Shown piece by piece: positions 608-62,308 of a stretch of 64,000 nucleotides of DNA. The position numbers were made by a program, and so were the translations under genes. Positions within the stretch are counted from its first letter, which is position 1. Every line of letters begins with the position of its first letter. The notes below the pieces were generated by a model. That model saw only the letters and a list, made by a program, of their open reading frames with translations. It ran no database searches and was not told the DNA's origin. Source of the stretch: Lepidodermella squamata (taxonomy: Eukaryota > Animalia > Gastrotricha); the NCBI GenBank assembly GCA_047495785.1, contig JBLDXI010000003.1, positions 2,914,001 to 2,978,000 on the forward strand, read 5' to 3'.

Positions 608-1110
608 CTAGTTGGAGACGCTGACGGACTTGCTGAAGGAGTACGAGCCCTTGTTGGCCTTGCGGCCGCCGAACTTGCCGTGGCCGAACTTGCCGCCCTT
701 GCGGCCGTAGCCGAAGTTCTTGCCGTGCTTGCCGAACTTGCGACCACCGAATCGCTTGTTGTTGCCGAAGCGATTGCCGGAGAACGAGGCGGACCGCGAG
801 TAGGAAACAGACTTGGAGACCGACTTGGAGAAGGATCCGCGGCGCTTGTTCATCTTCTTGCCGTGGCGCTTCTTCATCGGGAAGGCACGTCCCTTGCGGA
901 AAGCCCTCTTGTTCTCGAAGGAGCGGCTCGCCGAGGTGCTCACCTTCTTCTCGTAGTGCCGATGCATTTCCTTCGACTCGACATTCCACACCTTAGCCTC
1001 GGAGTAGGCTGAAAAAGATGATAGGGTTAGGCTATTGACATAATTTTGTAGGTGAATAGTTTACCAAGTCCGAGCAGGACGACAACAGCAATGGCGAGGA
1101 AAGCACGCAT
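608..1110 (-). CDS. Secreted cationic Ser/Gly/Lys/Arg-rich protein, family A copy 1 (148 aa; exons 1110-1065, 1008-608)
   Basis: Exon 1 MRAFLAIAVVVLLGL + phase-1 GT..TTTTCAG intron (56 nt); exon 2 AYSEAKVWNVESKEM...SYSFSKSVSVSN. Seven near-identical copies in the window; upstream TATAAAA and ATCATCAGCC. Confidence 0.9.
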
Positions 1111-1921
1111 GTTTAGAATGAGATGAATAAATAATTGATTAGGAAATGGAAAAGCGAGGGATGGCTGATGATTTTTCTTGTGTTCTTTTGCCACTTTTAT
1201 ATCGTGATATTCGCACTTGTAATTGTATTCTTAATTGGCATAGTTCGAAAAAATAGCCAATTATTTCGATCGGAAATTCGCATCTGAAATTCCAAGCGAG
1301 TATTCCCCATTGATAGTTAGAATATTGAAAATTGTAAAACAAAGTGAAATAATTTAATATTAAGATATCCCGCAAATTTTTCAATTAATAATTCAAAATT
1401 AATATTGCCACTGGATAAAAATATTTGTTGTTGTTGTCAAGAACCTCAGATTACAGATTATACCGTGTTTTAGAATAACTCAACGCCGATTTTACATCGA
1501 ATATCGCAACTTTTTCAAACCAATTTCGGCATGAACTTTACTTGGCACGTATGCTACAGACTCCATCTCCTCGAATTTGAAAATTGTTGTTCTTTTTACT
1601 AACGGCACTACCAGCTGATCGAGTTTGCAAGCCACGAGATTTTCAGCGTTAATTTTGAGATTCTCGGAATTAGGAGACCTCGAGTGGTATGGCACCTTGA
1701 TTTAAAAAAAAAATCGCCATTTGAAACTATGAGGATTCAACTATAATAGATGGCGAAAAAGGCGAATGAATTGCTATTAGCTGAACGTTTATTTCATTTC
1801 ACCAAATCTCAAAAATATGACCAGAAATATCAGACTGCTCATCACAGCTTGGCATGGCAAAATAAATTTAATTTTCTAAGTCTGCCGATCTTGAGCCAAC
1901 ATGCTGACCTAGTCTTGAGGA

Positions 1922-3294
1922 TTAGTAGGTGTAGGCGTCATCTCCATGCGCCGCTTCAGGGTTAATAACGCCGTGCGCCTTGTCACCCTTCTTGCCGCCC
2001 TTCTTTCCAGTTTCTTTACCGCCCTTCTTGCCTTCCTTCTTGCCGGTCTTCTTTTCAGTTTTCTTGCCACCCTTCTTGGCAGCCTTCTTGCCATGGTAGT
2101 CGCTGCTGCTGTTCTTCTTGGCGCTGGCGCTCTTTTCCTTGTAGCTGTGAGCAACTGAGGTCTTCTTGCCGCCCTTCTTTCCTTCCTTCTTGCCACCCTT
2201 CTTGGCGGCCTTCTTGGGGGCGCTGTCCTTCTTGGCGCTGGCGCTCTTCTCTTCTTGGTAGCTGGCAGAGACACCAGCATGGAAGTCGCGGGTGGCACGT
2301 TCAGCCGAGGCGGAGGCGCGTTTGCGGCCGTACTTGGCTCCAGCCTTGCGGGCGTGGGCAGAGTCAGAGACGGAGGTCTTCTTGCTGCTGGCCTTGTACT
2401 TGCGGGCGTTGTGGGAGTCACGGGCGACGGAAGTCGAGGCGCGGCGGTGGTGGGCCTTGTTGCGCTTCGCCTTCTTCGAGGCAGCGGCGGCCGAGGCAAC
2501 GGAATCGCGAGTGGCGTAGTCGGCAGAGTGGGCCTTGCGGGACTTCTTGCCGTGGGCCTTCTTGGCGGTCTTCTTGCGGCTGGCAGTGGTGGCAGCGCCG
2601 TCAGAGTCGAATGCAGCAAAGTCATTGGAGCCAGATTCGAAGCTGAACTTGTTGACGTTGTTGTGGCCCTTGTCGGTGAAGGTCTTCTTCTTGAACTCGA
2701 TCACCTCGCCGGCCTTGTCGCGGGCCTGGTCCTTGTGGAAACCAGCCTTGCGCTTGTGGTCGGCGCGGCCGTGCTTCTTGTTGCGGCTGTGTTTCTGAGC
2801 AGCGGCGGCGGCGCCAGAGCCAGCGTAGGCGTTGTCGTGCTTGGCGAAGGCAGCCGAGTCGCTCTTGCGGACAACGCGGCCGTGGCGCTTGCTGCCAGCC
2901 TTGGACTTTTTGCGGTCGTAGGTGGAATCACGCTTACCGGCCGAGGCGTAGCTGGCCGAGGCGCGTTCGTGGCTGGCCGATCGGGTCTTGATCAGCTTGC
3001 GCTTGTCGCTCGTCTTCTCGTTGTGGGAAGCGTCGGCCTCAGCGTAGTCGGCGGCGGCGAATTCTTGCTCAGCAGAGGCAGACTCGCGGGCGTAGGAGTC
3101 GTGTTGGTCGACAGAGGCGGAGAAGTCGGCCTTCTTGGAGCCTCCTTTCTTCGCACCTTTTCCTTTGCCATAGTCACCACCGGCAGACACTGATTAAAAA
3201 GCATTAAAAATAATAAAAAGATGATGTCGGATATTAAAGAATTACCAGTAGCGGCCAGCAGGACAATCACAGCGAGAGAAAGGCACACGCGCAT
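1922..3294 (-). CDS. Secreted Ala/Ser/Lys-rich low-complexity protein, family B copy 1 (438 aa; exons 3294-3246, 3189-1922)
   Basis: Signal exon MRVCLSLAVIVLLAAT, 56-nt phase-1 intron, then long ORF VSAGGDYGKGKG... with SASA motifs, KKGGKK repeats and C-terminal AYTY; strong GC3 codon bias; paralog at 44421-45676. Confidence 0.88.
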
Positions 3295-3399
3295 TTTAAA
3301 ATTGCTGATTCCAAATCGAGAAAATAATATTTGGATAGTTTTGAATTTTGAAAGAAAATAAGTTTGAAAAAATGATTGGAATAAAAACCAAAGCTAACT

Positions 3400-3560
3400 G
3401 GATGATATTTTTCCCATTTCAAAACCACCATTTATAGCCTGGTTGGTCATATTTCATCTACCTGTTGCGTGTTCGCCTAATGATGAATCGCGTGCTCGAC
3501 CTAATTATTAGCCCACCAGTGGCACCAATATCGCGAGCGAAAACCAGTGTTTTTAAAAAA
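3400..3560 (-). promoter_or_regulatory. Promoter block of family B copy 1 (TATAAAT and ATCAT initiator), homologous to the promoter of family C gene
   Basis: Collinear similarity with 46955-47110 (gatatttttcccattt..aaaccac..tttatagc..tttcatctacctgttgcgtg..atcgcgtg.tcgacctaatta..gcaccaat.tcgcgagcgaaaacca). Confidence 0.7.
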
Positions 3561-5272
3561 ACACCCGAGCGAGCTAATTTGTTTGTCTCGCCATTCACGA
3601 ACGTTTGAAACAAAAACCGAATGGCCAAAATCCAAAATGAAAAGATTTATGTTGCGTCCAGAAAAGTGATGATCATAAAAAAAAACTCGAGTTGAAGACG
3701 AGCGATCAGCTTCAGGATACTCAACGGACGAGACTATCATTTTCTAACTTGAAGAGTAGAGCCGCCTCGGCAATATTCTTGAAGTTTAATGCCGGAACTT
3801 TTAATGGCCTTTGTGTTTTCTCGAGCATTGGTGATAAACTGATGAAAGGTGTTCTCCACTTATAAATTGTCCAACTGAAAATAAAATGCAAACTTGGAAA
3901 TTAGGGCATACACTTGTTTTTGGTATCGAAAAATTCGTTTGCACAAGCCATTGGCATAGAGAACCGATTGAAATTCCTTTCTTTTTCATATTTTCATATT
4001 TCATATACCACAAGAGCCGCTGCAAAATAAGAAAAGGGCCATGAAAAAATGAAAAAAAATGAATTAAACAACTAAAAAAAGTTATCGTAAAAAGAATTTG
4101 GGCACGCTTTTCCGATGCACGTGTATCACGGTTTGATATTCACTTCTTCTCAAAATCAGTCGTTAAAATGTGATCGCTCTATTAAATGTGAGAAAAGCCG
4201 CGGTTTTCTATTCAATTTTTGAATCAGCTGCTCAGTTTTAATTAATTTGTCTGAAAATAGCAACCAAAATAATTTTAATAGTACTGTTCATTATCTGTTA
4301 ACGATTTTTCGAGCGGAGCGAGATTTTTGAGTCCAACAATATTTGATAGGGCGTGCCAAGTGCACACCTACTAAATTTGAGACTCCAGCGCACTAGATTT
4401 CCCCTAAATATGGTTTTTCGAATTTCTTGTCATATTTCGAAATCCGAATATTTCGAATATTTCGGTAGTTTTTCGGTAGTTCTACCGAAAAAGTATACCG
4501 CGCAGAACTACCGCAACATTTTTTTCAAGAATCTGAAAAAATATATACGATAATATATCAATAACTTAACCTAGAATTACATAATTTTGAAGATCAATCA
4601 TAATTTAATCATAATCATTTAACAAAATATCATAATTTAACTCTCAATATCAAAGCAATTTAAATATTCATATATAAGGGCCTATTTGGCCTGGCATTCC
4701 TACATTGCGCATGTATTTGACGATTATCAGTAATTTAACCAGCGTAAAAAATTTATGAATGTGGTCGCATTGCACTTATGCCATCCTTTACCAATATACG
4801 TAACAGAATAGAGCAATAATAATACGCTAAAACAGCTATGAATACTGTATTTATTTATCTATGACAACAACACATCAATTGTGCTGGAACATCCGCTCAG
4901 AGTGGTAAATTGAGGCGACCCTTTTGCATGTTCCGCGACTTGCACGGAAATGAGCCGGCAGTATCTTGTAGAGAATTCAACGGGCTATCAGCCGATATGA
5001 TCATTACCCGCCGGCGATGGTCCGTTCGCGTAACAGACGGGCGCAAAGTTTGCCAACATGTCGCGTATTTCAATTTTTCTCGCGTTTTTCAAGGCTTAAT
5101 TTGGCATGTTCCGCGATTTGCAGGAAAATGAGCCGGCAATATCTTGTGGATAATCCAACGGGCTATCATCCGAAACCTGTAATGCGTGTTATTCCGGGCC
5201 AATTTGCGACCTGTTGTATTGCGGCGCATATGCGATGTAGGAATATGTTTTCGTTGGGAGTAAATGTGGTTA

Positions 5273-6285: not shown

Positions 6286-9200
6286 ATGCCCGCAATTTTG
6301 CAGCCATTCATTGTTCAAGAAGGACCGTTCAATTCAACGAGCGAATTCAACTCATGGCAGCTGATAGGCAATGGCGGCTTCGGCACGGTCTACTTGTGCC
6401 ATCGAGCTGGAACCACTGAGACTTTTGCCATCAAGGAAGTCAACTTGACTCGAGAGGCAAAGAAAAACGTCAGGTTGGCAAAAAAGTGCTGCGATGAGGT
6501 AAGCTGTTCGATGTAAGTATATCTTGTAAGCAAGATCTTTCTCGTTACAGCACAAAAAGTTGAAGCAACTACGCCACCCCAACATCGTGCGAGTTTTTGG
6601 GGCATTTACAGGTATGAAATCCATGCTGAGATCAGTCGTTATATCAGCTATGACTATATTTCAGAGGTATACAAAGGCGATGACGCCTTGAATAGGAATT
6701 GTCTCATGTACTACCTGGTAATGGAGTACTGCGACGGCGGAGATTTGGCCAGTCGAATCGGAGAGGGGCGTGAGAAAATCAGCGAGGCGCAACTGCGAAT
6801 CTGGGCCAGGCAACTAGCCGAAGCGTTGAAGTGCCTGCACGACAACGAAATCGTTCACCGAGATATCAAGCCGGTAAACATTTTTATAAGCCGCGATGGG
6901 CAAACGCTGAAACTAGGCGATTTCGGCTTGGCTAAAGATTTGAGCATGTACTTTAACCGAATGATAATTTTTTCCACCCTCGCTCATCGTTTTCTTTTTA
7001 TAGAAAAGAGCAGACACCATCTACGACGCCTTGCACTTCTTGGGCTTATGCAGCTCCGGAGTACATCATGACATCTAATTACGATCCCCCGTGTGACGTG
7101 TGGTCATTTGGCGTTACTTTTTATGAATTGACGAATTTTGTCAGACCGGTGAGCCCTATTAGAAAGCGCAATATATCCGTTTGACATGAAAAGCTCCATT
7201 CCATTGTTTCAGTTCAGCGGCGTCGCTAATACGCCTGCGGTCGCTGTAAACATTAAAAAGTGAGTCACATGAATTCAATTTAGGGTGCCAACTTTCATAC
7301 ATATTTTTTTCATTTACTTCGAGCTGGAAACGATGGAAAATGACAGCGGACTAGTTTTCGGTTTTTAAAAACAAAAAACGGGGTTCCGAAAACGTAGCCG
7401 ATTTTTTCCGCTTGAAAATAGTTATTGGTAAAGTGCAAGGGCCCTAAATCGACCTGAACCTAACCTTCACCCTGAACCCTATCCAAACCCCAAAACTAAC
7501 CCTAACCCTGACTTCTAACCCTAACTCCAAATCCTAACTCCCGTTCGTCGTTTTCGTGAAAAACATAATTTTAAGAAAAAAAATATGTAAGAAAGGTAAT
7601 TTGTCATACATAAATATGTATGAAAGGTTCTCTCATCGAATCTCTCTCTCTCGAAGGCATTTAAATTGGCGAAATTGGGGGTGGAACGTGACAGGAACAT
7701 CCCAGGACATTCAGACAACGTTTTAGAGGAGCAATTCCAACTTTAATAAATGTAAGAAAAGCTGATTTTTAGCTGAGTTATTGAAGGTTCGAATTCCTGG
7801 CTAGATGGAAAAATATTCTGGTTAGATGAAAAAGGATTTTGGCAAGATGAAAAAAGACAGCCAAATTTTTCGGCCAGCTTCGCGTTAATTTCCTGGAATT
7901 ATTTTAGCGAATGGCGCGGGGCTACTTGCTAGTTTTTCTCTGTAGTATGAATCATATTATATATTGCAGATGACGTCGTGATTCATCAGGCGAATTTTGC
8001 ACAATGCTCGAAAAAGCAAAAATAATCATCTTTTAGAATTTATCCGCCAAAAGCCGTTCACCGGCCGGAAATTCTATTTGGATGAGCGTTGACTGAGAGT
8101 TGAGATCTACATTTTCCTAATTTTTTCGAGAACATTGAAGGTGGGGTCTTTTGAGATAGATCGAGGTTAAGTATCCAGTCGGAATCACCTTTCAGGTGCG
8201 TAGATTTTGCCGATTTTGCCGACTTTTTAGGTTTTGCCCTTAACGCAAGTCGACTTTTTTTACCAATTCCGCGGAATTTAGAGCAGCGGTTCGCGTAATT
8301 GACACTTGGGGGCCGGGCGGAACTAAAAATAGGAATTGAGCCAGTTTTTAATGCTCCATTTCAAAGCAAGTATTCCGGGTGGTCCTGAGACTAAGGCTTT
8401 GGTCTTCAGTCGCATTGGGAAGAAAACGCCGCGTAAATGATGAGGAGCTGAGCTATGATGACATTACCCCGAAGTTTTCAAGTTTTAATGTTATGTTATA
8501 TATGTTTTAGCGAGAAACCGCGGCCATTCGACAAATCACGTGGCTATTCGGCCCACTGCATCGATTTCACCATGTCACTCCTTGACAAGCAAAGTGAAAC
8601 CCGCCCGAAAATCGATCAAGTGTTGAATCATAGATTCCTGAAGGAATCGCAAGTAGCCAACGAGAACGCCGAAAAGGTATGTTGCATTATTTTACCATCT
8701 ACAAGATATCAAGATTTACCTATTTGTGGCACAAGACCTCACCTTAACTGCACTTCTTTCGGGTCATTTGATGACTCTTTATATTTTTAATTGCCAACTT
8801 GAATTCTCTTGTGCGTCTAAGCTTCAGTTTCTAATAAATTAATGCAATAAATTCCCAAAAAATTGGACGGGGATAAAAGTTAGGTATATATTTCGATAGC
8901 TTACCCCATCCTGGTAATAAAAACATTTTTCTGGAACTTTCCAATCAAATTTTAACAACTTTTTCCGCCCCGCAAATTTCAATCTTCGGGAATTTTAGCT
9001 GCTTTGCGAATATATAGATGACCCCATAAACGTCCTAGGAAGACGAACCTGGTCTCGTTGGAAAGAGCGTAAAAAGTTGTACAAAAATTATCAAAAAATT
9101 AGAAAAATGATGTTTTTTGAAAAATCGATATAAAAATGTGTCGATTTTTACATGCGCAAATGGCTCAAATAAAACGAACAAAAACGCGGCTTTGCACGCA

Positions 9201-12580: not shown

Positions 12581-13058
12581 TTAGTTGGAGACACTGACGG
12601 ACTTGCTGAAAGAGTACGAGCCCTTGTTAGCCTTGCGGCCGCCGAACTTGCCGCCCTTGCGGCCGTAGCCGAAGTTCTTGCCGTACTTGCCGAACTTGCG
12701 GCCACCGAATCGCTTGTTCTTGCGGTTGCCGGAGAAGGAGGCGGACCGCGAGTAGGAAACAGACTTGGAGACCGACTTGGAGAAGGATCCGCGGCGCTTG
12801 TTCATCTTCTTGCCGTGGCGCTTCTTCATCGGGAAGGCACGTCCCTTGCGGAAAGCCCTCTTGTTCTCGAAGGAGCGGCTCGCCGAGGTGCTCACCTTCT
12901 TCTCGTAGTGCCGGTGCATTTCCTTCGACTCGACATTCCAGACTTTGGCCTCGGAGTAAGCTGAAATAATAAAATATTTGAAGACGGCAAAATGAATTGG
13001 GAACAAGATTACCAAGTCCGAGCAGGACGACAACAGCGATAGCGAGGAAAGCACGCAT
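12581..13058 (-). CDS. Family A secreted cationic protein, copy 2 (141 aa; exons 13058-13013, 12960-12581)
   Basis: Same two-exon structure, 52-nt intron; shorter G/K/F-rich tail. Confidence 0.9.
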
Positions 13059-17337: not shown

Positions 17338-18131
17338 ATGCGCGTCTGTCTCGCTATCGCCGCTCTCGCCCTCATTTGCATCGGTAAGAAATCGGGTCAA
17401 GTAATAATCAAGGTCAACCTTTTTATTCTCCATCAGCTTATGCCGATGCGACGGTTTACAAGTTCGAGTCGAAAGAGCTGAACCGCCGCTACTCGAAGAA
17501 GACCAGCCTCTCGGTTAGCCGATCGTACGAAAACAACGCAGGTTTCGCCAAGAAGGGTGGCTACGCCCCGAAGAAGCGCCACGGTGGCAAGAAGTTCGGC
17601 CGCAAGATGAACAAGCGCCGCGGATCCTTCTCCAAGTCGGTGTCCAAGTCTGTTTCCTACTCGCGGTCCGCCTCGTTCTCCGGCAACCGCAAGAACAAGC
17701 GATTCGGTGGTCGCAAGTTCGGCAAGCACGGCAAGAACAAGTCGGTCTCCAAGTCTGTTTCTTTCTCCAGGTCTGCCTCGTTCTCGGGTGCTCGTCATGG
17801 AAAGCGCAACAACCGATTCGGTGCTCGCAAATACGGCAAGCACGGCAAGAAGGGCGGCAAGTGGGGCCACAACTTTGGCAACAACTACGGCCACAATTTC
17901 CGCAACAAATGGGGCCACAAGTTCGGAAACAACTACGGCCACAACTTTGGAAACGAGTACGGTCACAATTTCGGAAATGACTACGGCCACAACTTTGGAA
18001 ACGAATACGGCCACAAGTTCGGAAACAAATATGGCCATAATTTCGGAAACAAGTGGGGCCACAATTTCGGCGGTCACAAGGCCAACAAGGGCTCGTACTC
18101 CGTCAGCAAGTCCGTCAGCGTCTCCAACTAA
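17338..18131 (+). CDS. Family A' secreted cationic protein with GHNFGNx(Y/W) octapeptide repeats, copy 1 (246 aa; exons 17338-17383, 17437-18131)
   Basis: Signal exon MRVCLAIAALALICI, 53-nt intron; exon 2 shares the KMNKRRGSFSKSVSKSVSYSRSASFSG core and C-terminus with family A, plus 9 GH-started repeats. Confidence 0.88.
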
Positions 18132-18420: not shown

Positions 18421-18858
18421 TCAAGTCGAAGGCTCAGGAGTAGCGAAACTGGGTGCGATTTCGTTCATCTGGTCCTGGGTCAGAATTTTCGCAGCCGTTA
18501 TCTCTTGGAAATATCTTTGCATCGCACTTTCAACAGCGCTTTTTCGGTTGGCCCAGCCGCGAGACTCGGTAGTATGACCCGGCCATAGTTTCGGGCAGGT
18601 GAACTGACCGTCCCAGACCCATTGAAAGGTTCTAATCCTTCCCTTGTAACTGGCCGTGCAGTCGTAGGATCCAATCTTGTACGACTGTCCGTCTGACCAC
18701 TGGTGCAGGTTGTACACAGCAGTTCCTAATCCGATCCCACATTGGACCCAGTTTTGTTGAATACACGCAGTAAGGTCGACATTGGCCGAACCAGCCTGGG
18801 CCGAACACACCGCAGCGCAAATTGATAGAACACAGGCAATCGCGAGGATAGAATGCAT
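18421..18858 (-). CDS. ALF: ALF-like secreted protein, copy 2 (145 aa, intronless)
   Basis: Signal peptide MHSILAIACVLSICAAVCSA; CIQQNWVQC; LHQWSDG; C-TASYKGRIRTFQWVWDGQFT-C-PKLW (C-x20-C); C-terminal helices. Confidence 0.78.
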   Translation of the reverse strand: MHSILAIACVLSICAAVCSAQAGSANVDLTACIQQNWVQCGIGLGTAVYNLHQWSDGQSYKIGSYDCTASYKGRIRTFQWVWDGQFTCPKLWPGHTTESRGWANRKSAVESAMQRYFQEITAAKILTQDQMNEIAPSFATPEPST

Positions 18859-19753: not shown

Positions 19754-20249
19754 ATGCGCGCTTTCCTCGCAATTGCCGTTGTCGTCCTGCTCGGACTTGG
19801 TAATCTAGTTTCCGAATCGATGTCGCCATCATTCCATTATTTCCATTATTTCAGCTTACTCCGAGGCTAAGGTATGGAATGTCGAGTCGAAGGAAATGCA
19901 CCGGCACTACGAGAAGAAGGTGAGCACCTCGGCGAGCCGCTCCTTCGAGAACAAGAGGGCTTTCCGCAAGGGACGTGCCTTCCCGATGAAGAAGCGCCAC
20001 GGCAAGAAGATGAACAAGCGCCGCGGATCCTTCTCCAAGTCGGTCTCCAAGTCTGTTTCCTACTCGCGGTCCGCCTCCTTCTCCGGCAACCGCAAGAACA
20101 AGCGATTCGGTGGTCGCAAGTTCGGCAAGCACGGCAAGAACTTCGGCTACGGCCGCAAGGGCGGCAAGTTCGGACACGGCAAGTTCGGCGGTCGCAATGC
20201 CAACAAGGGCTCGTACTCCTTCAGCAAGTCAGTCAGCGTCTCCAACTAG
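19754..20249 (+). CDS. Family A secreted cationic protein, copy 3 (146 aa; exons 19754-19799, 19855-20249)
   Basis: Same structure; TATAAAA at ~19664 and ATCATCAGCC at 19681. Confidence 0.9.
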
Positions 20250-31268: not shown

Positions 31269-32032
31269 ATGAGAATCATCCTTGCCGTGGCTGTTTTTGC
31301 TCTGTTGCAAATCGGTAACAAATTTTTTTAAATTTTTTTAAATTATTTTAAATTTATCGTTTTCAAGCTCTGACGTCAGCTGGCCGAGGCGGCGGGCGTC
31401 TGCCTGATTTCAACCGAAGTGGTTTCATGAAGATGGGCAGCGATTCGGACTTTTCCGCGTATAACGACAATCGCATGAAAAAGCACCGTCGCCAGCCCGG
31501 CCACGCCGACCGCCACCACCGCCGTCACCAGAAGCCGAAGAAGCCGGCCGCCAGCAGCGGCTCAAAGCCCAAGCCGACGACGACTCAGAAACCGAAAAAG
31601 CCCGAAACTGTCGAGAAGCGGCCGCGTCGCCACCACGCGAAACCCCGCCGCCACGAACCCCGCCGTCACCAGCGCGACCCCCGCAAGCTCAAGTACCGCA
31701 CGTCGTCGGGCGATGCCATCACTGTTTCGTCCATGTCACACGACTCGTCGTCGCCTCGCCGTCGTTATCATCGCAAGCCGGTCTACGTCAAGTACTGCAG
31801 CGATTCGGCTAGCAGCCAGATGAAGTCGACTGCCCATCCAGCCGCTGGCGGCTCGACGACTGCCCATCCAGCGACTGGCGGCGCGACGACTGGCCACCCC
31901 GCCACTGGCGCCCCCGGTACCACTGGCCAGCCGACGACGACCCGCGCCCCTGTTGCCGCTACTACAACTGCTGCTGGCAACGTCAAGGTGCTGCAGGTTG
32001 AAAACGGTCTGAAGTTCGCGTTCAATATTTAA
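31269..32032 (+). CDS. Family D copy 2 (236 aa; exons 31269-31314, 31368-32032)
   Basis: Signal exon MRIILAVAVFALLQI; R/H/K/P-rich, YVKYCSDS, TTAHPATGG repeats, C-terminal GNVKVLQVENGLKFAFNI. Confidence 0.87.
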
Positions 32033-42615: not shown

Positions 42616-43125
42616 ATGTACTTGGCTTTTGCGATTTTCGGCCTGATGTTTTGCCTGATGCCATCGACGCAATCAGCCCCAGTGAATAATCTTCTGCCGT
42701 GCATTCAGCAAAACTGGGTTCAATGTGGGATCGCCCTGGGCTCAGCATTTTTCAAACTTCACCAGTGGTCAGATGGAGTGGCGTACAAGGTCGCATCTTA
42801 CGATTGTACTGCTCGGTACACAGGCAGAATCAGCACGTATCAAAAAGTCTGGGATGGGGAGTTCACCTGTCCGAGTCTTTGGCCGGGTCATTCCGGCAAT
42901 TCACAAGGATACACCAGCCAGACTGGAGCAATCGAACCCGCCATGCAAGATTTTTTCAAGAATCTTACGGCTGCGAATGTTCTGACCCAGGAACAGTGGG
43001 ACCAAATAGCACCTGGGGTTGTTAGACCTGCTACCACGGCTGCTCCTAAGAACGCTATCACCCGTGCAACTTTCAAATTGCCGAAAGAAGACGTTACACC
43101 TCGAAAAGGAGCCTTCATACCATGA
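42616..43125 (+). CDS. ALF: ALF-like secreted protein, copy 3 (169 aa, intronless)
   Basis: Signal peptide; CIQQNWVQC; C-TARYTGRISTYQKVWDGEFT-C-PSLW; TATATAAA at ~42544. Confidence 0.8.
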   Translation: MYLAFAIFGLMFCLMPSTQSAPVNNLLPCIQQNWVQCGIALGSAFFKLHQWSDGVAYKVASYDCTARYTGRISTYQKVWDGEFTCPSLWPGHSGNSQGYTSQTGAIEPAMQDFFKNLTAANVLTQEQWDQIAPGVVRPATTAAPKNAITRATFKLPKEDVTPRKGAFIP

Positions 43126-46895: not shown

Positions 46896-47761
46896 TGTTG
46901 GTTTCTAAAAAAATAGTATCGAACAGATAATCTGAAAATAAAGGGCAAAGCAAGTTGGAATGATATTTTTCCCATTTTGAAACCACTTTTTATAGCATGG
47001 CCGGTCGGGTTTTCATCTACCTGTTGCGTGGCCTGTTGCGATCGATCGCGTGTTCGACCTAATTATAGGTCAAACGGTTGCACCAATGTCGCGAGCGAAA
47101 ACCATTATTCTTTTAGAGACGCCCGTGCGGGTTCATTTTTTCATCTTCCAGTCTTAAAATAGATTGAAACGAATACGCAACGGACGAGACAATCCTAGAG
47201 TTTTACAATCATTTCATTGAAGTTGATATATCTGAAGAGTCCAGTCGCAACAGTCGCAGGAAACCAGTTTCTCCTCGTTCAACGTTGAATATATCGTGGG
47301 CCTTTTTCCGTGGCGAAATATCGAAAGTCGACAGCTTTTCGTATCGCAACTAGCAGCGGTAGCCGAGTAGCTATAACAGTTTCGAAGTTTTGATAGTAAA
47401 TATCAGATCAAAAAATAGAAAATCACTGCTAGATTTCGCGTTTTAGATTCTGAGCATTTATAACAATTACACATTCGGCGTTTTTCCAACTAAAAGCGAC
47501 CACTAGGATCACCTTCAGACATCAAATTTTCCTTTTACCGCAAGATTAGGAATTTTTTAACGCTGGAAACTGTTTTCGCCCTGCCAAATTATTCATCGAT
47601 TCTGCAGCCCGAATTACCGACCGCGCCTAATATTCGAAAACTTCCCTTGAGGCAAGAGTAACACAACGTTGGACCAATCGCATTTTATTCAGCAAAAGGC
47701 GAATACAATATTCGACTATAATTCAGATTATAAGTTATAATTTAGCATTTCGATGTTGCCT

Positions 47762-48261
47762 TTAGTTGGAGACGCTGACTGACTTGCTGAAGGAGTACGA
47801 GCCCTTGTTGGCTTTGCGACCGCCGAACTTGCCGTGGCCGAACTTGCCGCCCTTGCGGCCGTAGCCGAAGTTCTTGCCGTGCTTGCCGAACTTGCGACCA
47901 CCGAATCGCTTGTTCTTGCCCCAGCGGTTGCCGGAGAACGAGGCGGACCGCGAGTAGGAAACAGACTTGGAGACCGACTTGGAGAAGGACCCGCGGCGCT
48001 TGTTCATCTTCTTGCCGTGGCGCTTCTTCATCGGGAAGGCACGTCCCTTGCGGAAAGCCCTCTTGTTCTCGAAGGAGCGGCTCGCCGAGGTGCTCACCTT
48101 CTTCTCGTAGTGCCGGTGCATTTCCTTCGACTCGACGTTCCACACCTTGGCCTCGGAGTAAGCTGTAATTATACAACATTGAAAGACGGCGAAAATGATT
48201 TGAGAACAAGATTACCAAGTCCGAGCAGGACGACAACAGCAATAGCGAGGAAAGCACGCAT
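47762..48261 (-). CDS. Family A secreted cationic protein, copy 7 (148 aa; exons 48261-48216, 48162-47762)
   Basis: Same structure, 53-nt intron. Confidence 0.9.
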
Positions 48262-48995
48262 TGTTATGGGCTTAATTGAATGGAGAAGAAAATATCAATT
48301 TGAAACTTAAGCGAGAGATAGCTGATGATTTCTAACTAAATTTTCGCTTCATTTATACCACAGATCCCGGTTTTAATTGCAGTAATCGAGAAACGTGTCG
48401 TACTAATTAGTTGATTTTGTGCCGCAAAAGGAATTCCACAATGATGAGCGAACAATTTTTTCTCTATCGATAATAATGAGATAAGACCGCAATTTCCGAA
48501 CTTTTCCAATTAGGACTTTTCCATGCGCAATTAGGAATTGAACCGATTCAAAACGTTTCGAATTTCTGCGAAAATTCAGCAATTCGATCGTGGGCTGTGC
48601 CGAATTACGAATTCCGAATTGTTCCAGCCCGGGATTCGTTTGCTTGAGATGACTACGGACATTCGATTTCGTTCTCGTGGGGTTGTCGCAATAATTTGGT
48701 GACAGGCGTCGGTAAAACAAAGTCGTGCAATTTATTTAGAGTTTGATAAATTTTGGTGTAAAAAATTGTAAAAAATGGTGAATTTCTATACATTTACATG
48801 GGGAGCAAATAGTGTTGATACCTGCTTATGTAGCGAAAATTGATTTCCTAGAGCATTAAAATTCACCATTGGCAAATGATTTGAGGCCCAAAAAGTAGTT
48901 CAGGTAATGAAGCTGATTTACTGCAAAATTTACTATGAGATATTTATCGCTTTTCGAATATTTCCACGAAATTAAGGCAATTTATGAATTCTACA

Positions 48996-49151: not shown

Positions 49152-49177
49152 TAGTGAAGAGTACGTCTTATACAGAA

Positions 49178-52100: not shown

Positions 52101-54225
52101 TGCGAATTAATTTTTGTATTCGAATAAATAATTCGTCGTTGGCGATGAAAAAGTGCCATGTCCACGGGACGAAGTTTTAAGCTTTGAAGCGAACAACTTT
52201 TTTCTAAATGGGCTTTGCGAAATGGTCAAGCAACAATTCGCGGGGTCCCGAATTTTCCATATAAGTGTTTATTCATTTTTTGGAGCCTAATGAGCCGATT
52301 TGCAAAGTTTGAGCTCATTTTAAAATTCTTATGGCAATATACTAAAAAGGTCGCGGCAAGCAGCGGGTATTAGCCATATATTCACTTCGTAAATATTGAT
52401 GTGAGTTATTGCGAAAAAATCGCCAGTAATTTACGTTCATTTTTTGCAAGGACTTCGCGGGCTTCGATATAAATGGCCTCGTAAAACTACTACCCCTATG
52501 GACTAGTCCCTGAGAAATTTCGAAACTTGGTTTTCAAAATATTGTAGAGCGCCACGAGCAGTTACGTACTTGGGACCAAGGTTACGTAACTGTCAAAAAG
52601 TCATTTTCGGCCGGGTATGGGCGTAGCACTTTTTCGCGTCGACGACAAATTCGTGATATTAATTTCGACTTTTTAGCAGATTTTTTAAAATTTGCCTGAA
52701 GCGGTTCTGCATTTCAAAAAATTTCAAATAAATATTTCGGGCGATTCCATACGGCTCTTTCCGGTTAATTTTTCATAAAAATAGCATACCGTATTTGTTC
52801 CAAGTATTTGTTCGAATAGCAGCCCGGGCTAGTAAATTTTCAACCTGGAAATTTTGAAAATTTTGAAAAAAGTAGGTGAAAAGTTCATTTTTGATGCTTT
52901 CGAACTGAATTGACCCCTCAACCGCGTGCTACCATTAGGGATGGGCAATTATTAGTTGATGGGCTACTGTTGGATCAATTACGGTAATCTTGGGAATTAC
53001 GAAAATGAATATAAATTAGGAACTTCAGCTTTGGCTCGGCTTTTGAGGCGGATAATTGGTTCCGCTTTTAGATTAGGACCATACTCATTTTTATATTCCG
53101 AATAACAAAGGCATCGCACAAGCTCCCAAACGAAAAAAAAAGCACACGACAGAGCTCGCCAATAAACGAAAAGACCTCCAAACTTTACCGCTTTGGTTTG
53201 CTTCTCATGGCGAAAACAAACTGAAATAGTATATTATTGTGGGAATTTTTTTATCTGAAAGGTTGCAAATCGCCACTTGTATCTGTTGTCGCGATATTCG
53301 ACAGAAGCATCGCCGACGTAGTCGATACAGACCAAGCCGTTGTAGCAGTGGTCGCTGTAGTGCGAGTCGATAAAGCGAAAATTGCTGGGCGATAAGTGAG
53401 ACTAGTAGCCAGTCACATAGACATTTTCAACACCCAATTTCAGTATTACAAAAAATTGTGAAATTTGAAATTGAAATTTTTGGAATTTCGGAATTTACGG
53501 AACATTTTCCCATCTTTGTTGCTACTTTCCTAGTTCGACGTTTTCCCCTTTCTCATAAGTCGGCAAGCGGCATTTTCCAGTCTACGCGTGTCATGTTTTG
53601 GAAGAAAAATAGCCGAGCGGCCGACACAAGACACGAGTCGCGCCTTTTTCTCGCCGCTGGCAGCTCTGTTTCAGAGGCTGTACATACGAGCTGCGCGACC
53701 GCCCATAGTATTGATTCTGAAAATACGTTGACTCATTTTCTCGCTATTTTTCTATGTGCGGAATAGTATTCCTGTATTCCTCGAAATTGTAAGGCGCAAT
53801 TTGCAAAAAGTGAAGTTTCGAAAGAAGTTTGAGCTGGCAGTGATAAGCCACAAGCCGCACATTTACACATCTAATGCTGAGGCGCTGAAGTGTCGCTGTT
53901 GTTTGTTTACCGCTCTTGGGAGTCACCCTAGGCGCGCCTGATTTGTTTGTATAACAGCTAACGCAGCGGCGATAAACGCTCACATTGTGTTTATTTTACA
54001 TCTTGAGCAAACAGAACGCGAAAACCGAAATCGCTATTTCAGCATTTCACAAGGTGAACGTTTGGTTTCTCCGGGGAGAAAAACTCCCGTGAGAAAAAAT
54101 TCTCCAGGAGAAAACTCTGGCAGTGAAAGAGTTAACGCGTGCGCAAAGGGGAATGCGCAACTGGGAAATTTCGTGCGCAAAGGGGAATGCGCAAGTGGTA
54201 ATGCGCAAGTGGGCATGATCCGAAA
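49178..54225. mobile_element. Nested TTAA-targeted element complex: outer ~90-bp palindrome arms, inner ~400-bp MITE (49272-49665) and ~4.46-kb piggyBac-like non-coding element (49670-54131)
   Basis: Arms 49178-49267 / 54136-54225 are inverted copies. TTAA at 49268, 49666 and 54132. Inner TIRs CTCATTGACTGCCA / TGGCAGTGAAAGAG. Further inverted repeats at 50168-50893 and 52787-52986. Confidence 0.7.
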
Positions 54226-56932: not shown

Positions 56933-58237
56933 ATGAAGTCGCATCTTGCCGAGCTGAAGACTTCGGCGGCATTTAATCAAATTTTTGGTCACAGCTATGC
57001 TTTCACATACTCGTCGGGAGTGGTAATTTTTTTTAATTTTTAACCAAGTTTCGAAAAATTTCTCGAAATTTTGAACAGGCGATTTCTACATTTATGATGC
57101 TTTCATCTTTCCTAACCTACATCGGCGTGTATTTCGGCACCGAAGTGATTAACATGCCTTTCACAGCGGACATTTACGCATTTTCAAAGCTGTATAAAAT
57201 GGGAAATTTATCAGCTATGGATGTCAACAATCACATTCAAGTGGCTTCTATTGTTGTTTATATCGGCTCGGCGATTTTCATGGGTTTTCTCGCTATTTTC
57301 GGTGTTTTAACCCTGGTTTGCTTGTCAAACCGCGAAAACCACATACAACGGCATAATTCGATTGTAAGTTGCCTAAATTATCGATTTTAATATTTTGAGG
57401 GCTAATATTGGACTTTTTCTAGTGTGTGGCTATGCTGTTACTTGGAATTTCAACTCACGTAGCTGTTTTTGTCTGGTCGAGAGGTGAACTACGACAGGTA
57501 AAATTAAAATAAAAAATTAATTTAATTTAACGAATAAATTCGAGAAGAATCGATTTATAATTTTATAATTTTTTTAGGTTCAAAATAGGTTGAAAATTTA
57601 AAAATGGAAAATTTAATTTTTTTTCAATTTTTTCTCTAAAATGCCCAATTTTATTAGGTCATTTTTGCTGATTGAAAATTATGATTTTATTTTTTTTTCA
57701 TTTTAGATGAAAGACGGTCGAATTGATTCAGCTTTGATGCACATTCAAGATGGAATTTTAGTTGACACCGATCACGTGCCACCGGTATTAAATGAACCTG
57801 GCAATGCCTTCACGCTTATTCAACGCCAATTTAATTGCTGCGGCGTTGTGTCACCCTATGAATGGAGCATCACGGTCGATTGGTTTCGAACAAGCTACGG
57901 CCGTCTGAACCCATGGCATGGAATATCGATATTCCCATGCGATTACCGCCCGCCTAATACCACGTGCATTCAACAAGACGGAACAAGCGCTCAGGCCGCG
58001 CTTGACTGCACCCTCGATGACCCGATGACCCTGCGTGGCTGCGGCTATACCATCGAGCGGCGCGTTGTCGACTACATCGTTCGACTGATGCGAATTTCAG
58101 TTTTCTGCATAATTTTTCAAGCATTTGAACTGCTGTGGATTCTATGCATTTGTTACAGCTTCAAAGTCCCACTATTCACGGCGAGGCGGGTGAAACATCA
58201 TAAAACAATCAGCCTCATAAACGTGCCTCAAATTTGA
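56933..58237 (+). CDS. Divergent tetraspanin-like protein 1 (exons 56933-57022, 57079-57363, 57423-57497, 57707-58237)
   Basis: Four hydrophobic segments; IQRQFNCCG..P.EW, IFPC and GC before TM4; phase-0 splices in frame. Confidence 0.78.
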
Positions 58238-58946: not shown

Positions 58947-60996
58947 ATGTTACTGATGCCGAAAAATAGTTTGACGATGAACCGGTTGTTTATCAACACA
59001 TACGCCTTCACTTATTCGTCGTCTTTGGTAAGTCTCCAATTTTTTTTCTAAAATAAGCTAATTGGCACAAAATTTGAGACTTCGCTTCGACACCTTTCTA
59101 AGAACAAAAAATTAGGGACATTTAGGAGAAAGCCTTAAGGAGAAAGCCTTAACGGAAAATGGTGATAATGAATTTGAATTCCAGGGTGAATTGACAAACT
59201 ATTGTTATGGAATTAGGTCATTCCTTCAAAAATGACCTAATTTCTTCGAAAATGATCCAAAATAGCCAATATATTTTTCGTTTTTCTATTACTACCTCAT
59301 ATATTGTAAGGACTCTAAGAAAACTCAAATAAAATTGTATTTTTCAGATTTTTGTAAATTTAGCGCTAAAGTAACCTCTCAAGGTTAAGGCTTCACGCGA
59401 AATTGGGTGCTGGAACCTCAATTTTGATGAAGCATAAAAAACCGTTTAAAAAGTTGAAATAATTCTATGATGGGCTATTTTTTCAATATAAATTTGTTTG
59501 ATAGAAGGAATGTAAAAATCCTATATTTTCATCCGCTACGGTTAAAAAGATATTCCCATTTTTTTAGTCACGTGACCTTAACTGAAGTCACACCTGATTG
59601 ATTACCTCATGAACCGTGATAGCTAGGAAGCCGCTCTCAAAGAGAACTTTCATCAACGGGATGAGAAATACCAGGATAAACATTTAGATTGGCTCACAAA
59701 CACTCGTTCCCTACGATTTACACACCTGGAAGTTGTAGTCACCCTACAGAACTATTTCATACGGAGATAGTGAAAAAGCTGCCATCGAACTTGAATTTTA
59801 TAATTTTTTGTTGCAAAAGGCCATCTCAGTTGCGATGTTGCTGCTGGCCGGTGTTACCCTCATTGGCGTTCGAACCGGTGTTAAAATGATCGACACGCCG
59901 TACACGGCTGATATTCACGTGATGGCCGGGCTTTACCACGCAACAGCTAGCCGTAGTGAAATCTCAATAAAACTGCTCATCGTCTACCTGGCTTACGTCT
60001 TCGAAGCCGGAATCATCGCCAGCCTCTCGCTTATCGGCTTCTCTCGACTGTTCTGCTGCAGAAAAAACGCAAATAAAAACCCAATCCGGTACCACAACTC
60101 GGTCTACCTCGCTCTTGTGATAATAGGCGTCATGACCCACGTCGCTGTCCTTACCTGGTCTAAGACTGAAACTTACCAGCTCCAATCCGGCCGGCTGGAA
60201 CAATCGTTGATACAGCTTCAAAATCGCATTGAAACTACCCCGGACGGTCGTAATCTCAATTTTGAAGGTCAATTATTCCACGAAATTCAGCGCCAATTCG
60301 ACTGCTGCGGTGTTATTCTGCCATACGAATGGCAGGACGAAGTCACGTGGTTTAGGGTCAAATATGCCAATGTAACGAAAGGAAACCCGATTTTCCCTTG
60401 CATATCGTCCGAACAGCGCGAGGGCTGGCCTACGCGCAATTTATTTTCGGCACCTTGTCGCGATGAGGCGCCGACTGCTGATTGCACCCTTGAGGCGCCC
60501 AGGTCACTGAATGGGTGCGCCGATATGACCCAACAGCGCGGCATCGATTACCTATGCCGTCTATCCCGACTATGCGTCTTTTGCATTGCCCTACAGGTAA
60601 TTTGTCGAAAAATATTTAAAAAATCAAATTGAAAAAAAATTAAATTTTAAATTTCAACATTTTAAATTTAAGTTTTTTTTGTAATTTTTTTAAATTCAAC
60701 CAATTTAATTTTGTTATAAAATTTCTTTAATTTCAAATAATTAATTTAATAATTAATTTAATTTATTTATTTTCAAATTTTAGACTTTCGAATTTATTTG
60801 GCTGATGTGCCTCTGCCGCGCTTACAACATTTCGCTGCTGATGGGATCTATGCAGGTGATTTGTATCGAGGAAGAGGCGGATGATATCAATGCCGGTAAC
60901 AATAAGGCAGCAGAAATGCGCGACGCTTCCAGCATGACAACGTCTCTGAACGAAACTACGAGCGACAAAGCGGCCATTGTTCATTTTGCTGCATAG
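58947..60996 (+). CDS. Divergent tetraspanin-like protein 2 (exons 58947-59027, 59820-60596, 60784-60996)
   Basis: Paralog of the previous gene (YAFTYSS, P(F/Y)TADI, RYHNS, THVAV.xWS, IQRQFDCCG, DCTL..P..L.GC). Confidence 0.8.
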
Positions 60997-61511
60997 AAAC
61001 AAATGAGTGTTAACTTCGCAAAACCATAAATTTAACTATTTTTTTAGTATTTTTCTGATATATATTCCGCGATGAATAAAGATTATGAGTTCACGCAAGG
61101 AAGATTTTTAGATTTTTGAATGTTTGAAAAAATATATTTATGATAGGATAAAATAAGAAAATTAAATCAACTTGAATTAGTTGTAGAAAATGTAAAATGT
61201 GTAAAGTATATTTCGCATATTTTTCGCCAGAAATAATCGATATGGAATATTATTAAACTTATAGTTTCTATCGATTTTTCGACAAAATTTTCCGATGGAA
61301 TTCGACTGCGATTCGGTCTCTTTCAGCTCTAATTATTTCGATCGTTTATTCGCCAAAAATTGAGAAATTTAAGGATAAAAATGCTGCGTATCAGGGATAA
61401 TTATTTCTTAATTGGCAAAAATCTGGTATAAAACTGACCCGAAGTTATCGAGAAAAATATCAGTAATCATCCTTATTCTATTTTTCCATTGCATCATCAA
61501 ACTCTGCGAAA

Positions 61512-62308
61512 ATGCGCGCTTGTCTCGCTATCGCCGCTCTCGCCCTCATTTGCATCGGTAAGAAATTGGGTCAAGTAATGACCCAATGACCCAATGAGTA
61601 ATGAAAAAAGGTCAACCTTTTTATTCCCCATCAGCGTATGCCGATGCGACGGTTAACAAGTTCGAGTCGAAGGAGCTGAACCGCCGCTACTCGAAGAAGA
61701 CCAGCCTCTCGGTTAGCCGATCGTACGAAAACAACGCAGGTTTCGCCAAGAAGGGTGGCTACGCCCCGAAGAAGCGCCACGGTGGCAAGAAGTTCGGCCG
61801 CAAGATGAACAAGCGCCGCGGATCCTTCTCCAAGTCGGTGTCCAAGTCTGTTTCCTACTCGCGGTCCGTCTCGTTCTCCGGCAACCGCAAGAACAAGCGA
61901 TTCGGTGGTCGCAAGTTCGGCAAGCACGGCAAGAACAAGTCGGTCTCCAAGTCTGTCTCCTTCTCCAGGTCCGCCTCGTTCTCGGGTGCTCGTCATGGCA
62001 AGCGCAACAACCGATTCGGTGCTCGCCGTTACGGCAAGAACCACGGCAAGAAGGGCGGCAAGTGGGGCCACAACTTCGGCAACAACTACGGCCACAATTT
62101 CCGCAACAAATGGGGCCACAAGTTCGGAAACAAGTACGGTCACAACTTCGGAAACGAATACGGGCACAATTTTGGAAATCAGTACGGCCACAATTTCGGA
62201 AACAAGTATGGCCATAATTTCGGCAACAAGTGGGGCCACAATTTCGGCGGTCACAAGGCCAACAAGGGCTCGTACTCCGTCAGCAAGTCGGTCAGCGTCT
62301 CCAACTAA
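61512..62308 (+). CDS. Family A' copy 2 (239 aa; exons 61512-61557, 61635-62308)
   Basis: Signal exon MRACLAIAALALICI; 8 GH-started octapeptide repeats; paralog of 17338-18131. Confidence 0.88.

What the first reader, a model, noticed from the sequence alone, without database searches (positions are those of the whole stretch)
608..62308. Co-clustered 16-gene locus of secreted cationic silk/glue-like proteins: candidate undescribed bioadhesive, tube or egg-case secretion system
Seen: six protein families (A x7, A' x2, B x2, C, D x3, E), with little mature-sequence similarity except between A and A', packed into 62 kb. All have a 15-16 codon MR-starting signal exon followed by a phase-1 intron, mostly ~50-60 nt. 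They share strong GC3 codon bias and extreme K/R/S/G/A content with few or no Cys, plus recurring micro-motifs (SxSxS, SASA, KKGGK). Established: multi-component, low-complexity, phosphoserine/cationic secreted proteins are the design of caddisfly silk, sandcastle-worm cement and mussel byssus. Inference: this is a dosage-amplified toolkit for one gland making an extracorporeal material, with the interleaved ALF-like genes protecting it from microbes. I do not recognise any of these families as described proteins.
Basis: partly seen in the sequence, partly recalled or inferred. Interest (0 to 1): 0.92.

Follow-up and report, generated by a model that had tools for sequence, protein, structure and literature searches.

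The report
Gastrotrich secreted polycationic structural protein genes
A microscopic freshwater animal (very likely the gastrotrich Lepidodermella squamata) carries 16 real genes here for secreted, strongly positively charged proteins with no known relatives; they probably build its egg shell, cuticle or glue, but they look like two or three separately controlled sets, not one gland's toolkit.

Summary
The 16 genes are real. Fifteen are intact; B2 is frameshifted and C has three exons. All encode signal-peptide-bearing, Cys-poor proteins (pI 10-12). No homologue was found for A/A', B or D2; C and E were checked only against Pfam. The host is very likely the gastrotrich Lepidodermella squamata (circumstantial), so a tube or cocoon is unlikely.

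Protein motifs and promoters split the genes into matching groups. A, A' and C have alternating-serine stripes and a CAATTA site 18-40 nt before the TATA box. B and E share a 208-nt promoter (76% identical) despite unrelated proteins. D has neither. In the one RNA-like run (probably adult), B and E sequence is far deeper than A, which argues against a single programme. A copies are under strong purifying selection (dN/dS about 0.1). E models weakly as a curli-like beta-solenoid.

Best reading: orphan structural proteins of extracellular coverings (egg shell, cuticle). Flatworm-style adhesive and antimicrobial roles are rivals. Function is untested. This scan already noted similar clusters elsewhere in this genome, so the window is one sample of a dispersed superfamily.

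The parts
608..1110 (-). A1: exons 1110-1065 and 1008-608; 148 aa
1922..3294 (-). B1: exons 3294-3246 and 3189-1922; 438 aa, K/A/S-rich, KKGGK x5; predicted helical or disordered
3380..3583 (-). B1 promoter, 76% identical over 208 nt to the E promoter; contains CAGGTAG, TATA (3436) and an ATCA initiator-like site
12581..13058 (-). A2: exons 13058-13013 and 12960-12581; 141 aa
14024..16145 (+). C: three exons 14024-14072, 14124-14377, 14775-16145; 557 aa, seven alternating-serine stripes (three end in E, two in D), Thr/Pro stretch; splicing not tested by RNA
17338..18131 (+). A'1: exons 17338-17383 and 17437-18131; 246 aa, A-like core plus an 8-residue G/H/N/F/Y repeat
19754..20249 (+). A3: exons 19754-19799 and 19855-20249; 146 aa
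26990..27484 (+). A4: exons 26990-27035 and 27090-27484; 146 aa
29756..30423 (+). D1: exons 29756-29801 and 29852-30423; 205 aa, K/R/H block, then Thr/Pro stretch and conserved C-terminal 18-mer, one Cys
31269..32032 (+). D2: exons 31269-31314 and 31368-32032; 236 aa
33890..34391 (+). A5: exons 33890-33935 and 33991-34391; 148 aa
43336..43835 (-). A6: exons 43835-43790 and 43736-43336; 148 aa
44421..45676 (-). B2: probable pseudogene; 13-nt insertion at about 44761-44773, premature stop at 44665, original frame runs on to 44421; only a degenerate TATA-like site; starts 182 nt after the E stop codon
45859..46895 (-). E: exons 46895-46850 and 46796-45859; 327 aa, eight Ser/Ala hairpin-like units separated by G/R/H/F spacers; intron spliced in the RNA-like run
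46937..47141 (-). E promoter, homologous to the B1 promoter
47762..48261 (-). A7: exons 48261-48216 and 48162-47762; 148 aa
54521..55283 (-). D3: exons 55283-55238 and 55185-54521; 236 aa
61512..62308 (+). A'2: exons 61512-61557 and 61635-62308; 239 aa
1..354 (+). ALF-like gene 1 (5' end lies outside the window), tail-to-tail with A1, 253 nt between stops
18421..18858 (-). ALF-like gene 2, intronless, 145 aa, tail-to-tail with A'1 (289 nt)
42616..43125 (+). ALF-like gene 3, intronless, 169 aa, tail-to-tail with A6 (210 nt)

Best explanation
The window is one sample of a genome-wide, lineage-restricted set of secreted polycationic low-complexity proteins of a chaetonotid gastrotrich. They serve as mass-produced building blocks of its extracellular coverings (egg shell or egg coat, and scaled cuticle), in at least two separately controlled programmes.

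Shown: gene structures, signal-peptide-like N-termini, purifying selection, three promoter classes that match three protein designs, and splicing of E.

Inferred: Group I (A, A', C) is made in a short burst at a stage poorly sampled in adult RNA, such as the late embryo laying down cuticle and scales, or resting-egg formation; hence many near-identical A copies. Nearly all serines of A lie in alternating stripes (20 of 21). Phosphorylating them would offset the +32 charge and give a self-neutralising chain whose stripes zip into beta-sheets, as in caddisfly fibroin. Group II (B, E) shares one promoter and is bulk-produced in adults, most plausibly by the very large oocyte or the epidermis. E may stack its eight hairpins into a curli-like beta-solenoid or fibril with disordered G/R/H loops, while B is a cationic helical or disordered filler. 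Group III (D) looks like a cationic mucin-type linker.
For: A paralogues: dN about 0.009, dS about 0.09, exon 2 96% identical, while introns are 69% and flanks about 60% identical. CAATTA/TAATTG lies 18-40 nt before the TATA box in all ten stripe genes and in none of B1, E, D1-3. B1 and E promoters are 76% identical over 208 nt, E=1e-37. TATA plus an ATCA initiator-like site stands before 14 genes, with a variant in C. The RNA-like run X2 has zero depth in intergenic bins, splices the E intron, and shows B and E depth of 8,000-160,000 per bin against 20-34 for A. The only transcriptome of this species is adult (PMC11660948). Stripes match the (SX)nE design in C and at the first stripe of A and A' (PMC10387566). 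The E model has eight beta-hairpins and its top fold match is curli CsgA, Z 15.4, rmsd 7.6 over 177 residues.
Against: There is no localisation, proteomic or phosphorylation evidence. Depth comes from Logan contigs, which the tool says cannot rank genes; A splicing was not among the listed joints, and C and D were not covered by the one read-laying run. The E model is single-sequence and low-confidence (mean pLDDT 50, pTM 0.50), and Foldseek found nothing. The host identity is circumstantial. The CAATTA motif was found post hoc, and the A copies are not independent. Tyrosine is low (0-6%), unlike DOPA-tanned flatworm egg shells (own knowledge). I found no paper on the protein make-up of gastrotrich cuticle or egg shell.
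Confidence: 0.5

Rival explanations
1. The families are components of the duo-gland adhesive or a mucous secretion, equivalent to the Gly/Arg/Lys-rich cohesive proteins of flatworms (Mlig-ap1 KR regions, Mile-ap3, Tmed-ap3), the sister phylum. They would be released from the two furcal tubes and undone by a polyanion.
For: G+R+K+H+S make up 59-63% of A, A' and E. Flatworm ap3 is a signal peptide plus a GRKHS low-complexity region with a shown adhesive role (PMC9229212, PMC6745481, PMC6410801). Gastrotrichs have adhesive tubes and are the sister group of flatworms (PMC4563153). All intact genes share one core promoter layout.
Against: Flatworm adhesive proteins are 1,700-14,800 aa with vWD, C-type lectin, EGF or TSP domains, or are 88% GRKHS; these are 141-557 aa, 41-63% GRKHS and have no Pfam domain. 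No sequence homology was found. There are three promoter classes and very unequal RNA depth. An unchecked scan note (s1-368357) reports a giant polycationic gene elsewhere in the genome that fits ap3 better.
Confidence: 0.22
2. Group I (A and A') are glycine-rich cationic antimicrobial or surface-defence proteins kept in a cassette with the ALF-like genes, and are low in the RNA pool because they were uninduced.
For: All three ALF-like genes (PF11630 above the curated cut-off) lie tail-to-tail within 210-290 nt of an A or A' gene, including one pairing with the diverged A'. ALF-like and A depth in the RNA-like run are similarly low, about 10-40. Net charge per residue is +0.25 with 12-15% aromatic residues.
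Against: Six of nine A/A' genes have no ALF partner, and the ALF-A-B block at 1-3.3 kb is duplicated co-linearly at 42.8-45.7 kb, so linkage can be by descent. No kappaB-site enrichment was found. The ALF upstream regions lack the TATA-ATCA layout. Invariant serine stripes are not a feature of known antimicrobial peptides (own knowledge). This reading does not explain B, C, D or E.
Confidence: 0.13
3. B and E are non-structural reproductive secretions: yolk or storage proteins packed in oocyte granules, or products of the post-parthenogenetic X-body or sperm-associated tissue.
For: B and E are very deep in a probably adult RNA pool of a parthenogenetic, egg-producing animal. They are rich in nitrogen-carrying residues (K, R, H).
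Against: The strictly conserved hairpin repeat in E and the serine stripes in A and C suggest assembly, not storage. Strong purifying selection is atypical of seminal proteins (own knowledge). Signal peptides exclude protamine-like chromatin proteins.
Confidence: 0.12
4. The multi-copy cluster is an artefact of whole-genome amplification or of uncollapsed haplotypes.
For: The probable source assembly came from multiple displacement amplification of one animal with 3% heterozygosity (PMC11660948).
Against: The A copies differ by about 31% in introns and about 40% in flanks while keeping the protein. Intergenic DNA is matched letter for letter by run X1, and family sequence also appears in three other runs.
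Confidence: 0.02

Closest known systems
Caddisfly H-fibroin (SX)nE motifs (PMC10387566)
   Same: Alternating-serine stripes with hydrophobic, aromatic or basic X, separated by glycine-rich or charged spacers. Exact (SX)5E occurs three times in C and (SX)4E once in each A and A'.
   Different: H-fibroin is 200-500 kDa with conserved termini and an L-fibroin partner. These are 14-60 kDa, strongly net-cationic and without homology. The longest A stripes do not end in E, and phosphorylation is unshown.
Flatworm GRK/GRKHS cohesive proteins Mlig-ap1, Mile-ap3, Tmed-ap3 (PMC6410801, PMC6745481, PMC9229212)
   Same: Secreted, low-complexity, G/R/K/H/S-rich and very basic; found in the sister phylum, which also has duo-gland adhesion.
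   Different: Those are 3,700-5,400 aa, 88% GRKHS (Tmed-ap3) or carry vWD, lectin and EGF cores. These are short, multi-copy, 41-63% GRKHS, carry ordered-looking Ser or Ser/Ala stripes and show no homology.
Sandcastle-worm cement (Pc-1/2 cationic, Pc-3 phosphoserine) and mussel foot proteins (own knowledge)
   Same: Multi-component sets of small secreted low-complexity proteins with opposite-charge chemistry.
   Different: Those rely on DOPA-rich G/K/Y chains and a separate polyserine. Here Tyr is 0-6% and no anionic partner gene lies in the window.
Curli CsgA and other beta-solenoid functional amyloids (PDB 8c50, 8enq)
   Same: The low-confidence model of E stacks eight repeated hairpins, and curli CsgA is the top fold match (Z 15.4).
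   Different: rmsd is 7.6, the model is weak, there is no sequence homology, and E has long cationic loops between units. This is a lead only.
Anti-lipopolysaccharide factors of crustaceans and horseshoe crabs (PF11630; PMC10672452)
   Same: The three neighbouring genes pass the Pfam cut-off and keep the two-cysteine loop with 20 residues between.
   Different: They are intronless, two have a Thr/Pro-rich C-terminal tail, they occur in a probable spiralian host, and their activity is untested.

Membership tests
Caddisfly H-fibroin | Repeated (SX)nE motifs | tested here: met
   C has three (SX)5E and two (SX)5D; A and A' have one (SX)4E each; B, D and E have no stripe of four or more serines
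Caddisfly H-fibroin | 200-500 kDa chain with conserved N- and C-termini | tested here: not met
   141-557 aa; no homology
Caddisfly H-fibroin | Serines phosphorylated and bridged by calcium | not testable with these tools
   Needs phosphoproteomics; S-x-E sites: A 2, C 7, B1 4, D1 7, E 0, D2 and D3 0
Flatworm ap1/ap3 GRK cohesive proteins | Signal peptide plus G/R/K/H/S-dominated low-complexity region | tested here: inconclusive
   59-63% in A, A' and E and 41-53% in B, C and D, against 87.7% in Tmed-ap3
Flatworm ap1/ap3 GRK cohesive proteins | Very large size (3,700-5,400 aa) or a vWD/lectin/EGF core | tested here: not met
   Short proteins with no Pfam domain
Flatworm ap1/ap3 GRK cohesive proteins | Expressed in adhesive gland cells and present in footprints | not testable with these tools
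   No spatial data
DOPA-based cements and egg-shell proteins | High tyrosine content as DOPA precursor | tested here: not met
   Tyr 0-6% of the mature chain; E has one Tyr
Curli-like beta-solenoid functional amyloid (protein E) | Tandem beta-arc or hairpin repeats stacking into a solenoid | tested here: inconclusive
   Eight units, mean pLDDT 50, VIA Z 15.4 and rmsd 7.6 to CsgA; no Foldseek hit
Curli-like beta-solenoid functional amyloid (protein E) | Forms cross-beta fibrils | not testable with these tools
   Needs ThT, fibre diffraction or cryo-EM
Anti-lipopolysaccharide factor (neighbouring genes) | PF11630 match above the curated cut-off with the Cys-x20-Cys loop | tested here: met
   37.7, 31.0 and 27.9 bits against a cut-off of 25
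Anti-lipopolysaccharide factor (neighbouring genes) | LPS binding and antimicrobial activity | not testable with these tools
   No assay
Protamine-like or chromatin basic proteins | Intracellular, no signal peptide | tested here: not met
   All 16 begin with a hydrophobic signal-peptide-like exon, judged by inspection; no predictor was available

The most novel reading that the evidence does not exclude
These genes are the first molecular parts list of a gastrotrich covering (egg shell or scaled cuticle), built without collagen or DOPA from two convergently evolved self-assembling designs: small self-neutralising phosphoserine-stripe polyampholytes (A, A', C) and a cationic curli-like beta-solenoid functional amyloid (E) co-expressed with B from a shared promoter.
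Probability: 0.25. Interest if true: 0.82.

Novelty: new variant of a known kind. Interest (0 to 1): 0.55.

Why it matters
I found no paper naming a protein of the gastrotrich cuticle, egg shell or adhesive. The probable host is commercially cultured and has a published genome. These gene models, the three promoter classes and the stage contrast (B and E deep in adult RNA, A shallow) therefore give direct probes for in situ work and proteomics. If the stripes are phosphorylated, the (SX)nE chemistry of caddisfly silk arose independently in a spiralian in chains of only about 130 residues, an attractive minimal scaffold for wet materials. The general design, secreted cationic low-complexity block proteins, is already known from several underwater materials, so this is a new set of parts and not a new principle.

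Tried and rejected
Homology searches, all blank:
- Pfam on exon pieces of A, A', B, C, D and E.
- Word-indexed protein search with A1 exon 2, ALF3 and D2 exon 2. These see only 0.55-1.75x the query length.
- Exhaustive phmmer of B1 exon 2 against 1.84 billion representatives.
- ESM Atlas with B1 and A'1.
- Metagenome scans with B1 and with the A/A' alignment.
- Exact-protein look-up and PDB sequence search for ALF3.
- Foldseek of the E model. The Atlas shape search gave only generic matches of TM about 0.5 or less.
The collections appear to lack this animal's proteome, since even ALF3 found nothing, so blanks do not prove absence in other gastrotrichs.

Joined protein models were built only inside local scripts and were not searched.

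The B1 model is uninformative (pTM 0.19, helices and disorder).

Rejected: an arthropod host (my first guess, from ALF genes and the initiator motif); an amplification or haplotype artefact; protamine-like proteins (signal peptides); kappaB-driven control; extra family members or fragments in the window (none found). The shared signal exon plus phase-1 intron was not accepted as proof of common descent. Exon-1 DNA is more alike between families than codon shuffles give (0.47 against 0.36), but positional bias of signal peptides and the general phase-1 habit after signal exons (own knowledge) can produce this.

Literature searches for gastrotrich cuticle, egg-shell or adhesive chemistry returned nothing useful.
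Full report
OBSERVATION. A scan for Met-Arg signal-like exons followed by a short intron and a long open frame recovered exactly 16 genes between 608 and 62308: seven A (141-148 aa), two A' (239 and 246 aa), two B, one C (557 aa), three D (205-236 aa) and one E (327 aa). Exon 1 is 46 or 49 nt, and the first intron is phase 1 and 50-61 nt (77 nt in A'2). Mature chains have pI 10-12, net charge +17 to +123 and 0-3 cysteines. No further family copies or fragments lie in the window.

C needs three exons. B2 has a 13-nt insertion at about 44761-44773 that shifts the frame. RNA-run contigs break at 44760 and 44779, and one contig from another run spans the site with 13 gap letters, so B-family sequence elsewhere lacks the insertion. 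GC3 is not uniformly high: E is 0.58 against 0.44-0.56 for unrelated genes. The micro-motifs are patchy: serine stripes occur only in A, A' and C, SASA only in B and E, and D has none.

HOST. Earlier scan notes (s1-421969, s1-387735) suggested the gastrotrich Lepidodermella squamata, and my circumstantial checks agree. Window GC is 43.3% against 43.28% for the 122.8-Mb, 157-contig assembly (PMC11660948); the scan index lists 1,993 windows on 147 pieces. The best-holding run X1 dates from 2024, and its study also holds a 101-million-letter run of another organism, as expected from that paper's C. elegans benchmark. The RNA-like run X2 dates from 2015, and the paper states that only an adult transcriptome exists. 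Run names are coded, so this is very likely, not proven. Chaetonotidae have two furcal adhesive tubes, an ornamented cuticle and parthenogenetic reproduction, and freshwater gastrotrichs make resting stages (PMC4563153). To my knowledge they make no tube, cocoon or silk.

REAL GENES UNDER SELECTION. Among the seven A copies, pooled pN is 0.009 and pS 0.083. dN/dS is 0.12 for A', 0.22 for D2/D3 and 0.26 for B1/B2 before the frameshift. A exon 2 is 96% identical on average, introns 69% and flanks about 60%. This excludes amplification chimeras and uncollapsed haplotypes (heterozygosity 3%) and shows that the exact sequence of a low-complexity protein is being kept. The ALF-A-B block at 1-3.3 kb is repeated co-linearly at 42.8-45.7 kb. 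In X1, intergenic contigs match exactly at depth about 33, while single sites in A exons reach 580-990 and in B 257. This is not a copy number but points to many more paralogues. Unchecked scan notes report similar clusters up to about 1 Mb before and 0.55 Mb after this window and on other pieces. The 'locus' is therefore a window-sized sample of a dispersed set, interleaved with a kinase-ankyrin gene, tetraspanin-like genes, a C-type lectin gene and a Ty3 element.

THREE PROMOTER CLASSES MATCH THREE PROTEIN DESIGNS. Fourteen genes have a TATA box followed about 28-32 nt later by an ATCA (or TTCA) initiator-like site. C has a TTTAAAA variant and B2 only a degenerate site.

Group I (all seven A, both A' and C) has CAATTA/TAATTG, a homeodomain-type site, 18-40 nt before the TATA box; B1, E and D1-3 have none within 120 nt. 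These are exactly the proteins with alternating-serine stripes. In A1, 20 of 21 serines lie in stripes, and in A'1, 28 of 30. The motif was found post hoc and the A copies are related, but C is unrelated in its mature sequence.

Group II: the B1 and E promoters align over 208 nt at 76% (E=1e-37) although the proteins do not align, and only these two carry CAGGTAG. In the duplicated block, E sits behind this promoter and the broken B2 follows 182 nt downstream. Either E was inserted between the promoter and B, or E was lost at the B1 copy. Group III (D) has neither feature.

EXPRESSION. One read-laying run covered 42560-48400. X2 has zero depth in five intergenic bins and joins 46796 to 46850 with canonical ends, confirming the E intron and the RNA nature of the run. 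Bin depth is 20,000-160,000 over B, 8,000-42,000 over E, 20-34 over A6 and A7, and 9-29 over the ALF-like gene. At single sites it is 1,057 for B against 8-40 for A. The B signal comes from paralogues, not B2: contigs carry 5-12 differences per 85-90 nt. The tool warns that contig depth cannot rank genes, and repeats inflate B and E, so this is suggestive only. The direction is still opposite to what a single dosage-amplified programme predicts, since the most amplified family is the scarcest, and it agrees with the promoter split. A splicing was not among the listed joints; C and D were not covered.

HOMOLOGUES AND STRUCTURE. No relative was found for A, A', B or D2 in any collection searched; C and E were tested only against Pfam. 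These collections seem to lack this animal's proteome, so the blanks show only that no distant, well-sampled family matches. Runs X3 and X5 from other studies hold low-depth pieces about 90-99% alike to A, B and E coding sequence, probably the same or a close species. Searches were made exon by exon by reference; joined models were used only in local scripts.

A single-sequence AlphaFold model of E places a beta-hairpin on each of its eight Ser/Ala units with disordered cationic loops between (mean pLDDT 50, pTM 0.50). Its best structural match is curli CsgA (Z 15.4, rmsd 7.6, 177 aligned), followed by other beta-solenoids. Foldseek found nothing, and the Atlas gave only generic matches. This is a lead, not a fold assignment. 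B models as loose helices and disorder (pTM 0.19).

MECHANISM (inferred). The proteins enter the secretory pathway and are condensed with polyanions. Group I stripes, if phosphorylated, would offset the +32 charge of A (20 stripe serines) and pair as beta-sheets with the hydrophobic or aromatic X residues on one face, as modelled for caddisfly (SX)nE domains (PMC10387566). C has three exact (SX)5E and two (SX)5D stripes, and A one (SX)4E. E would self-stack; B and D would act as cationic filler and mucin-like linker. High dosage with low adult RNA fits a brief burst such as embryonic cuticle and scale deposition or resting-egg shell formation. Very deep adult RNA fits the oocyte or epidermis. 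I put this 'coverings' reading at 0.5.

RIVALS. A duo-gland adhesive role (0.22) rests on compositional likeness to flatworm GRK cohesive proteins, but those are about 7-40 times longer and more GRKHS-pure or domain-bearing. A defence role for A (0.13) rests on the ALF pairing: all three ALF-like genes lie tail-to-tail 210-289 nt from an A or A' gene. However, six of nine A/A' genes have no partner, co-duplication explains the linkage, kappaB sites are not enriched, and the ALF promoters differ. Yolk, storage or X-body secretion gets 0.12, and artefact 0.02.

VERDICT. The proteins work like known secreted low-complexity biomaterial components but are members of none of those families. They are undescribed in the papers I could search, but this scan has noted similar clusters several times elsewhere in the same genome. 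New here are the three promoter classes that track protein design, the shared B/E promoter, the contrast in RNA depth, the broken B2 and the solenoid lead for E. Novelty: new variant of a known kind. Interest 0.55.

Noticed in passing
window 37273-42278: Intact Ty3/gypsy LTR retrotransposon with a chromodomain: one 1,529-aa gag-pol frame (37584-42173, +) and two 245-nt LTRs that are 100% identical, so a very recent insertion; no envelope domain among the Pfam hits.
   Followed up: partly
window 1-354, 18421-18858, 42616-43125: Three intronless ALF-like genes (PF11630) in a probable gastrotrich; ALFs are described from crustaceans and horseshoe crabs. Two carry a Thr/Pro-rich C-terminal tail. 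No relative was found in the word-indexed search.
   Followed up: partly
window 6288-11920 (+): Multi-exon gene that appears to join a Ser/Thr kinase domain to a long terminal ankyrin-repeat exon; read by eye, not modelled.
   Followed up: no
window 57094-58237 and 59808-60632 (+): Two divergent tetraspanin-like genes or gene pieces, scoring at or just above the Pfam cut-off.
   Followed up: partly
window 20741-21169 (-): C-type lectin-like open frame just downstream of A3.
   Followed up: partly
window 45677-45858 (-): Only 182 nt separate the E stop from the B2 start. E has no AATAAA within 200 nt, and a pyrimidine tract ending in TAG lies 16 nt before the B2 ATG. This could be a relic operon-like or trans-splice arrangement; RNA-run contigs cover this gap at low depth.
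   Followed up: partly
window 14124-14377 (+): Predicted exon 2 of C is acidic and rich in His, Asp and Gln, unlike the rest of the protein; it may be a metal-binding or charge-masking pro-region. No Pfam hit.
   Followed up: partly
window 49178-49374, 49563-49670, 54132-54225; 34752-35680: Short inverted repeats (two pairs 100% identical, one pair 79%) that look like ends of non-autonomous DNA transposons.
   Followed up: no
window 35865-36266 (-): 133-codon Ala/Lys/Glu-rich open frame without a Pfam match, beside the 34.7-35.7 kb inverted repeat.
   Followed up: no
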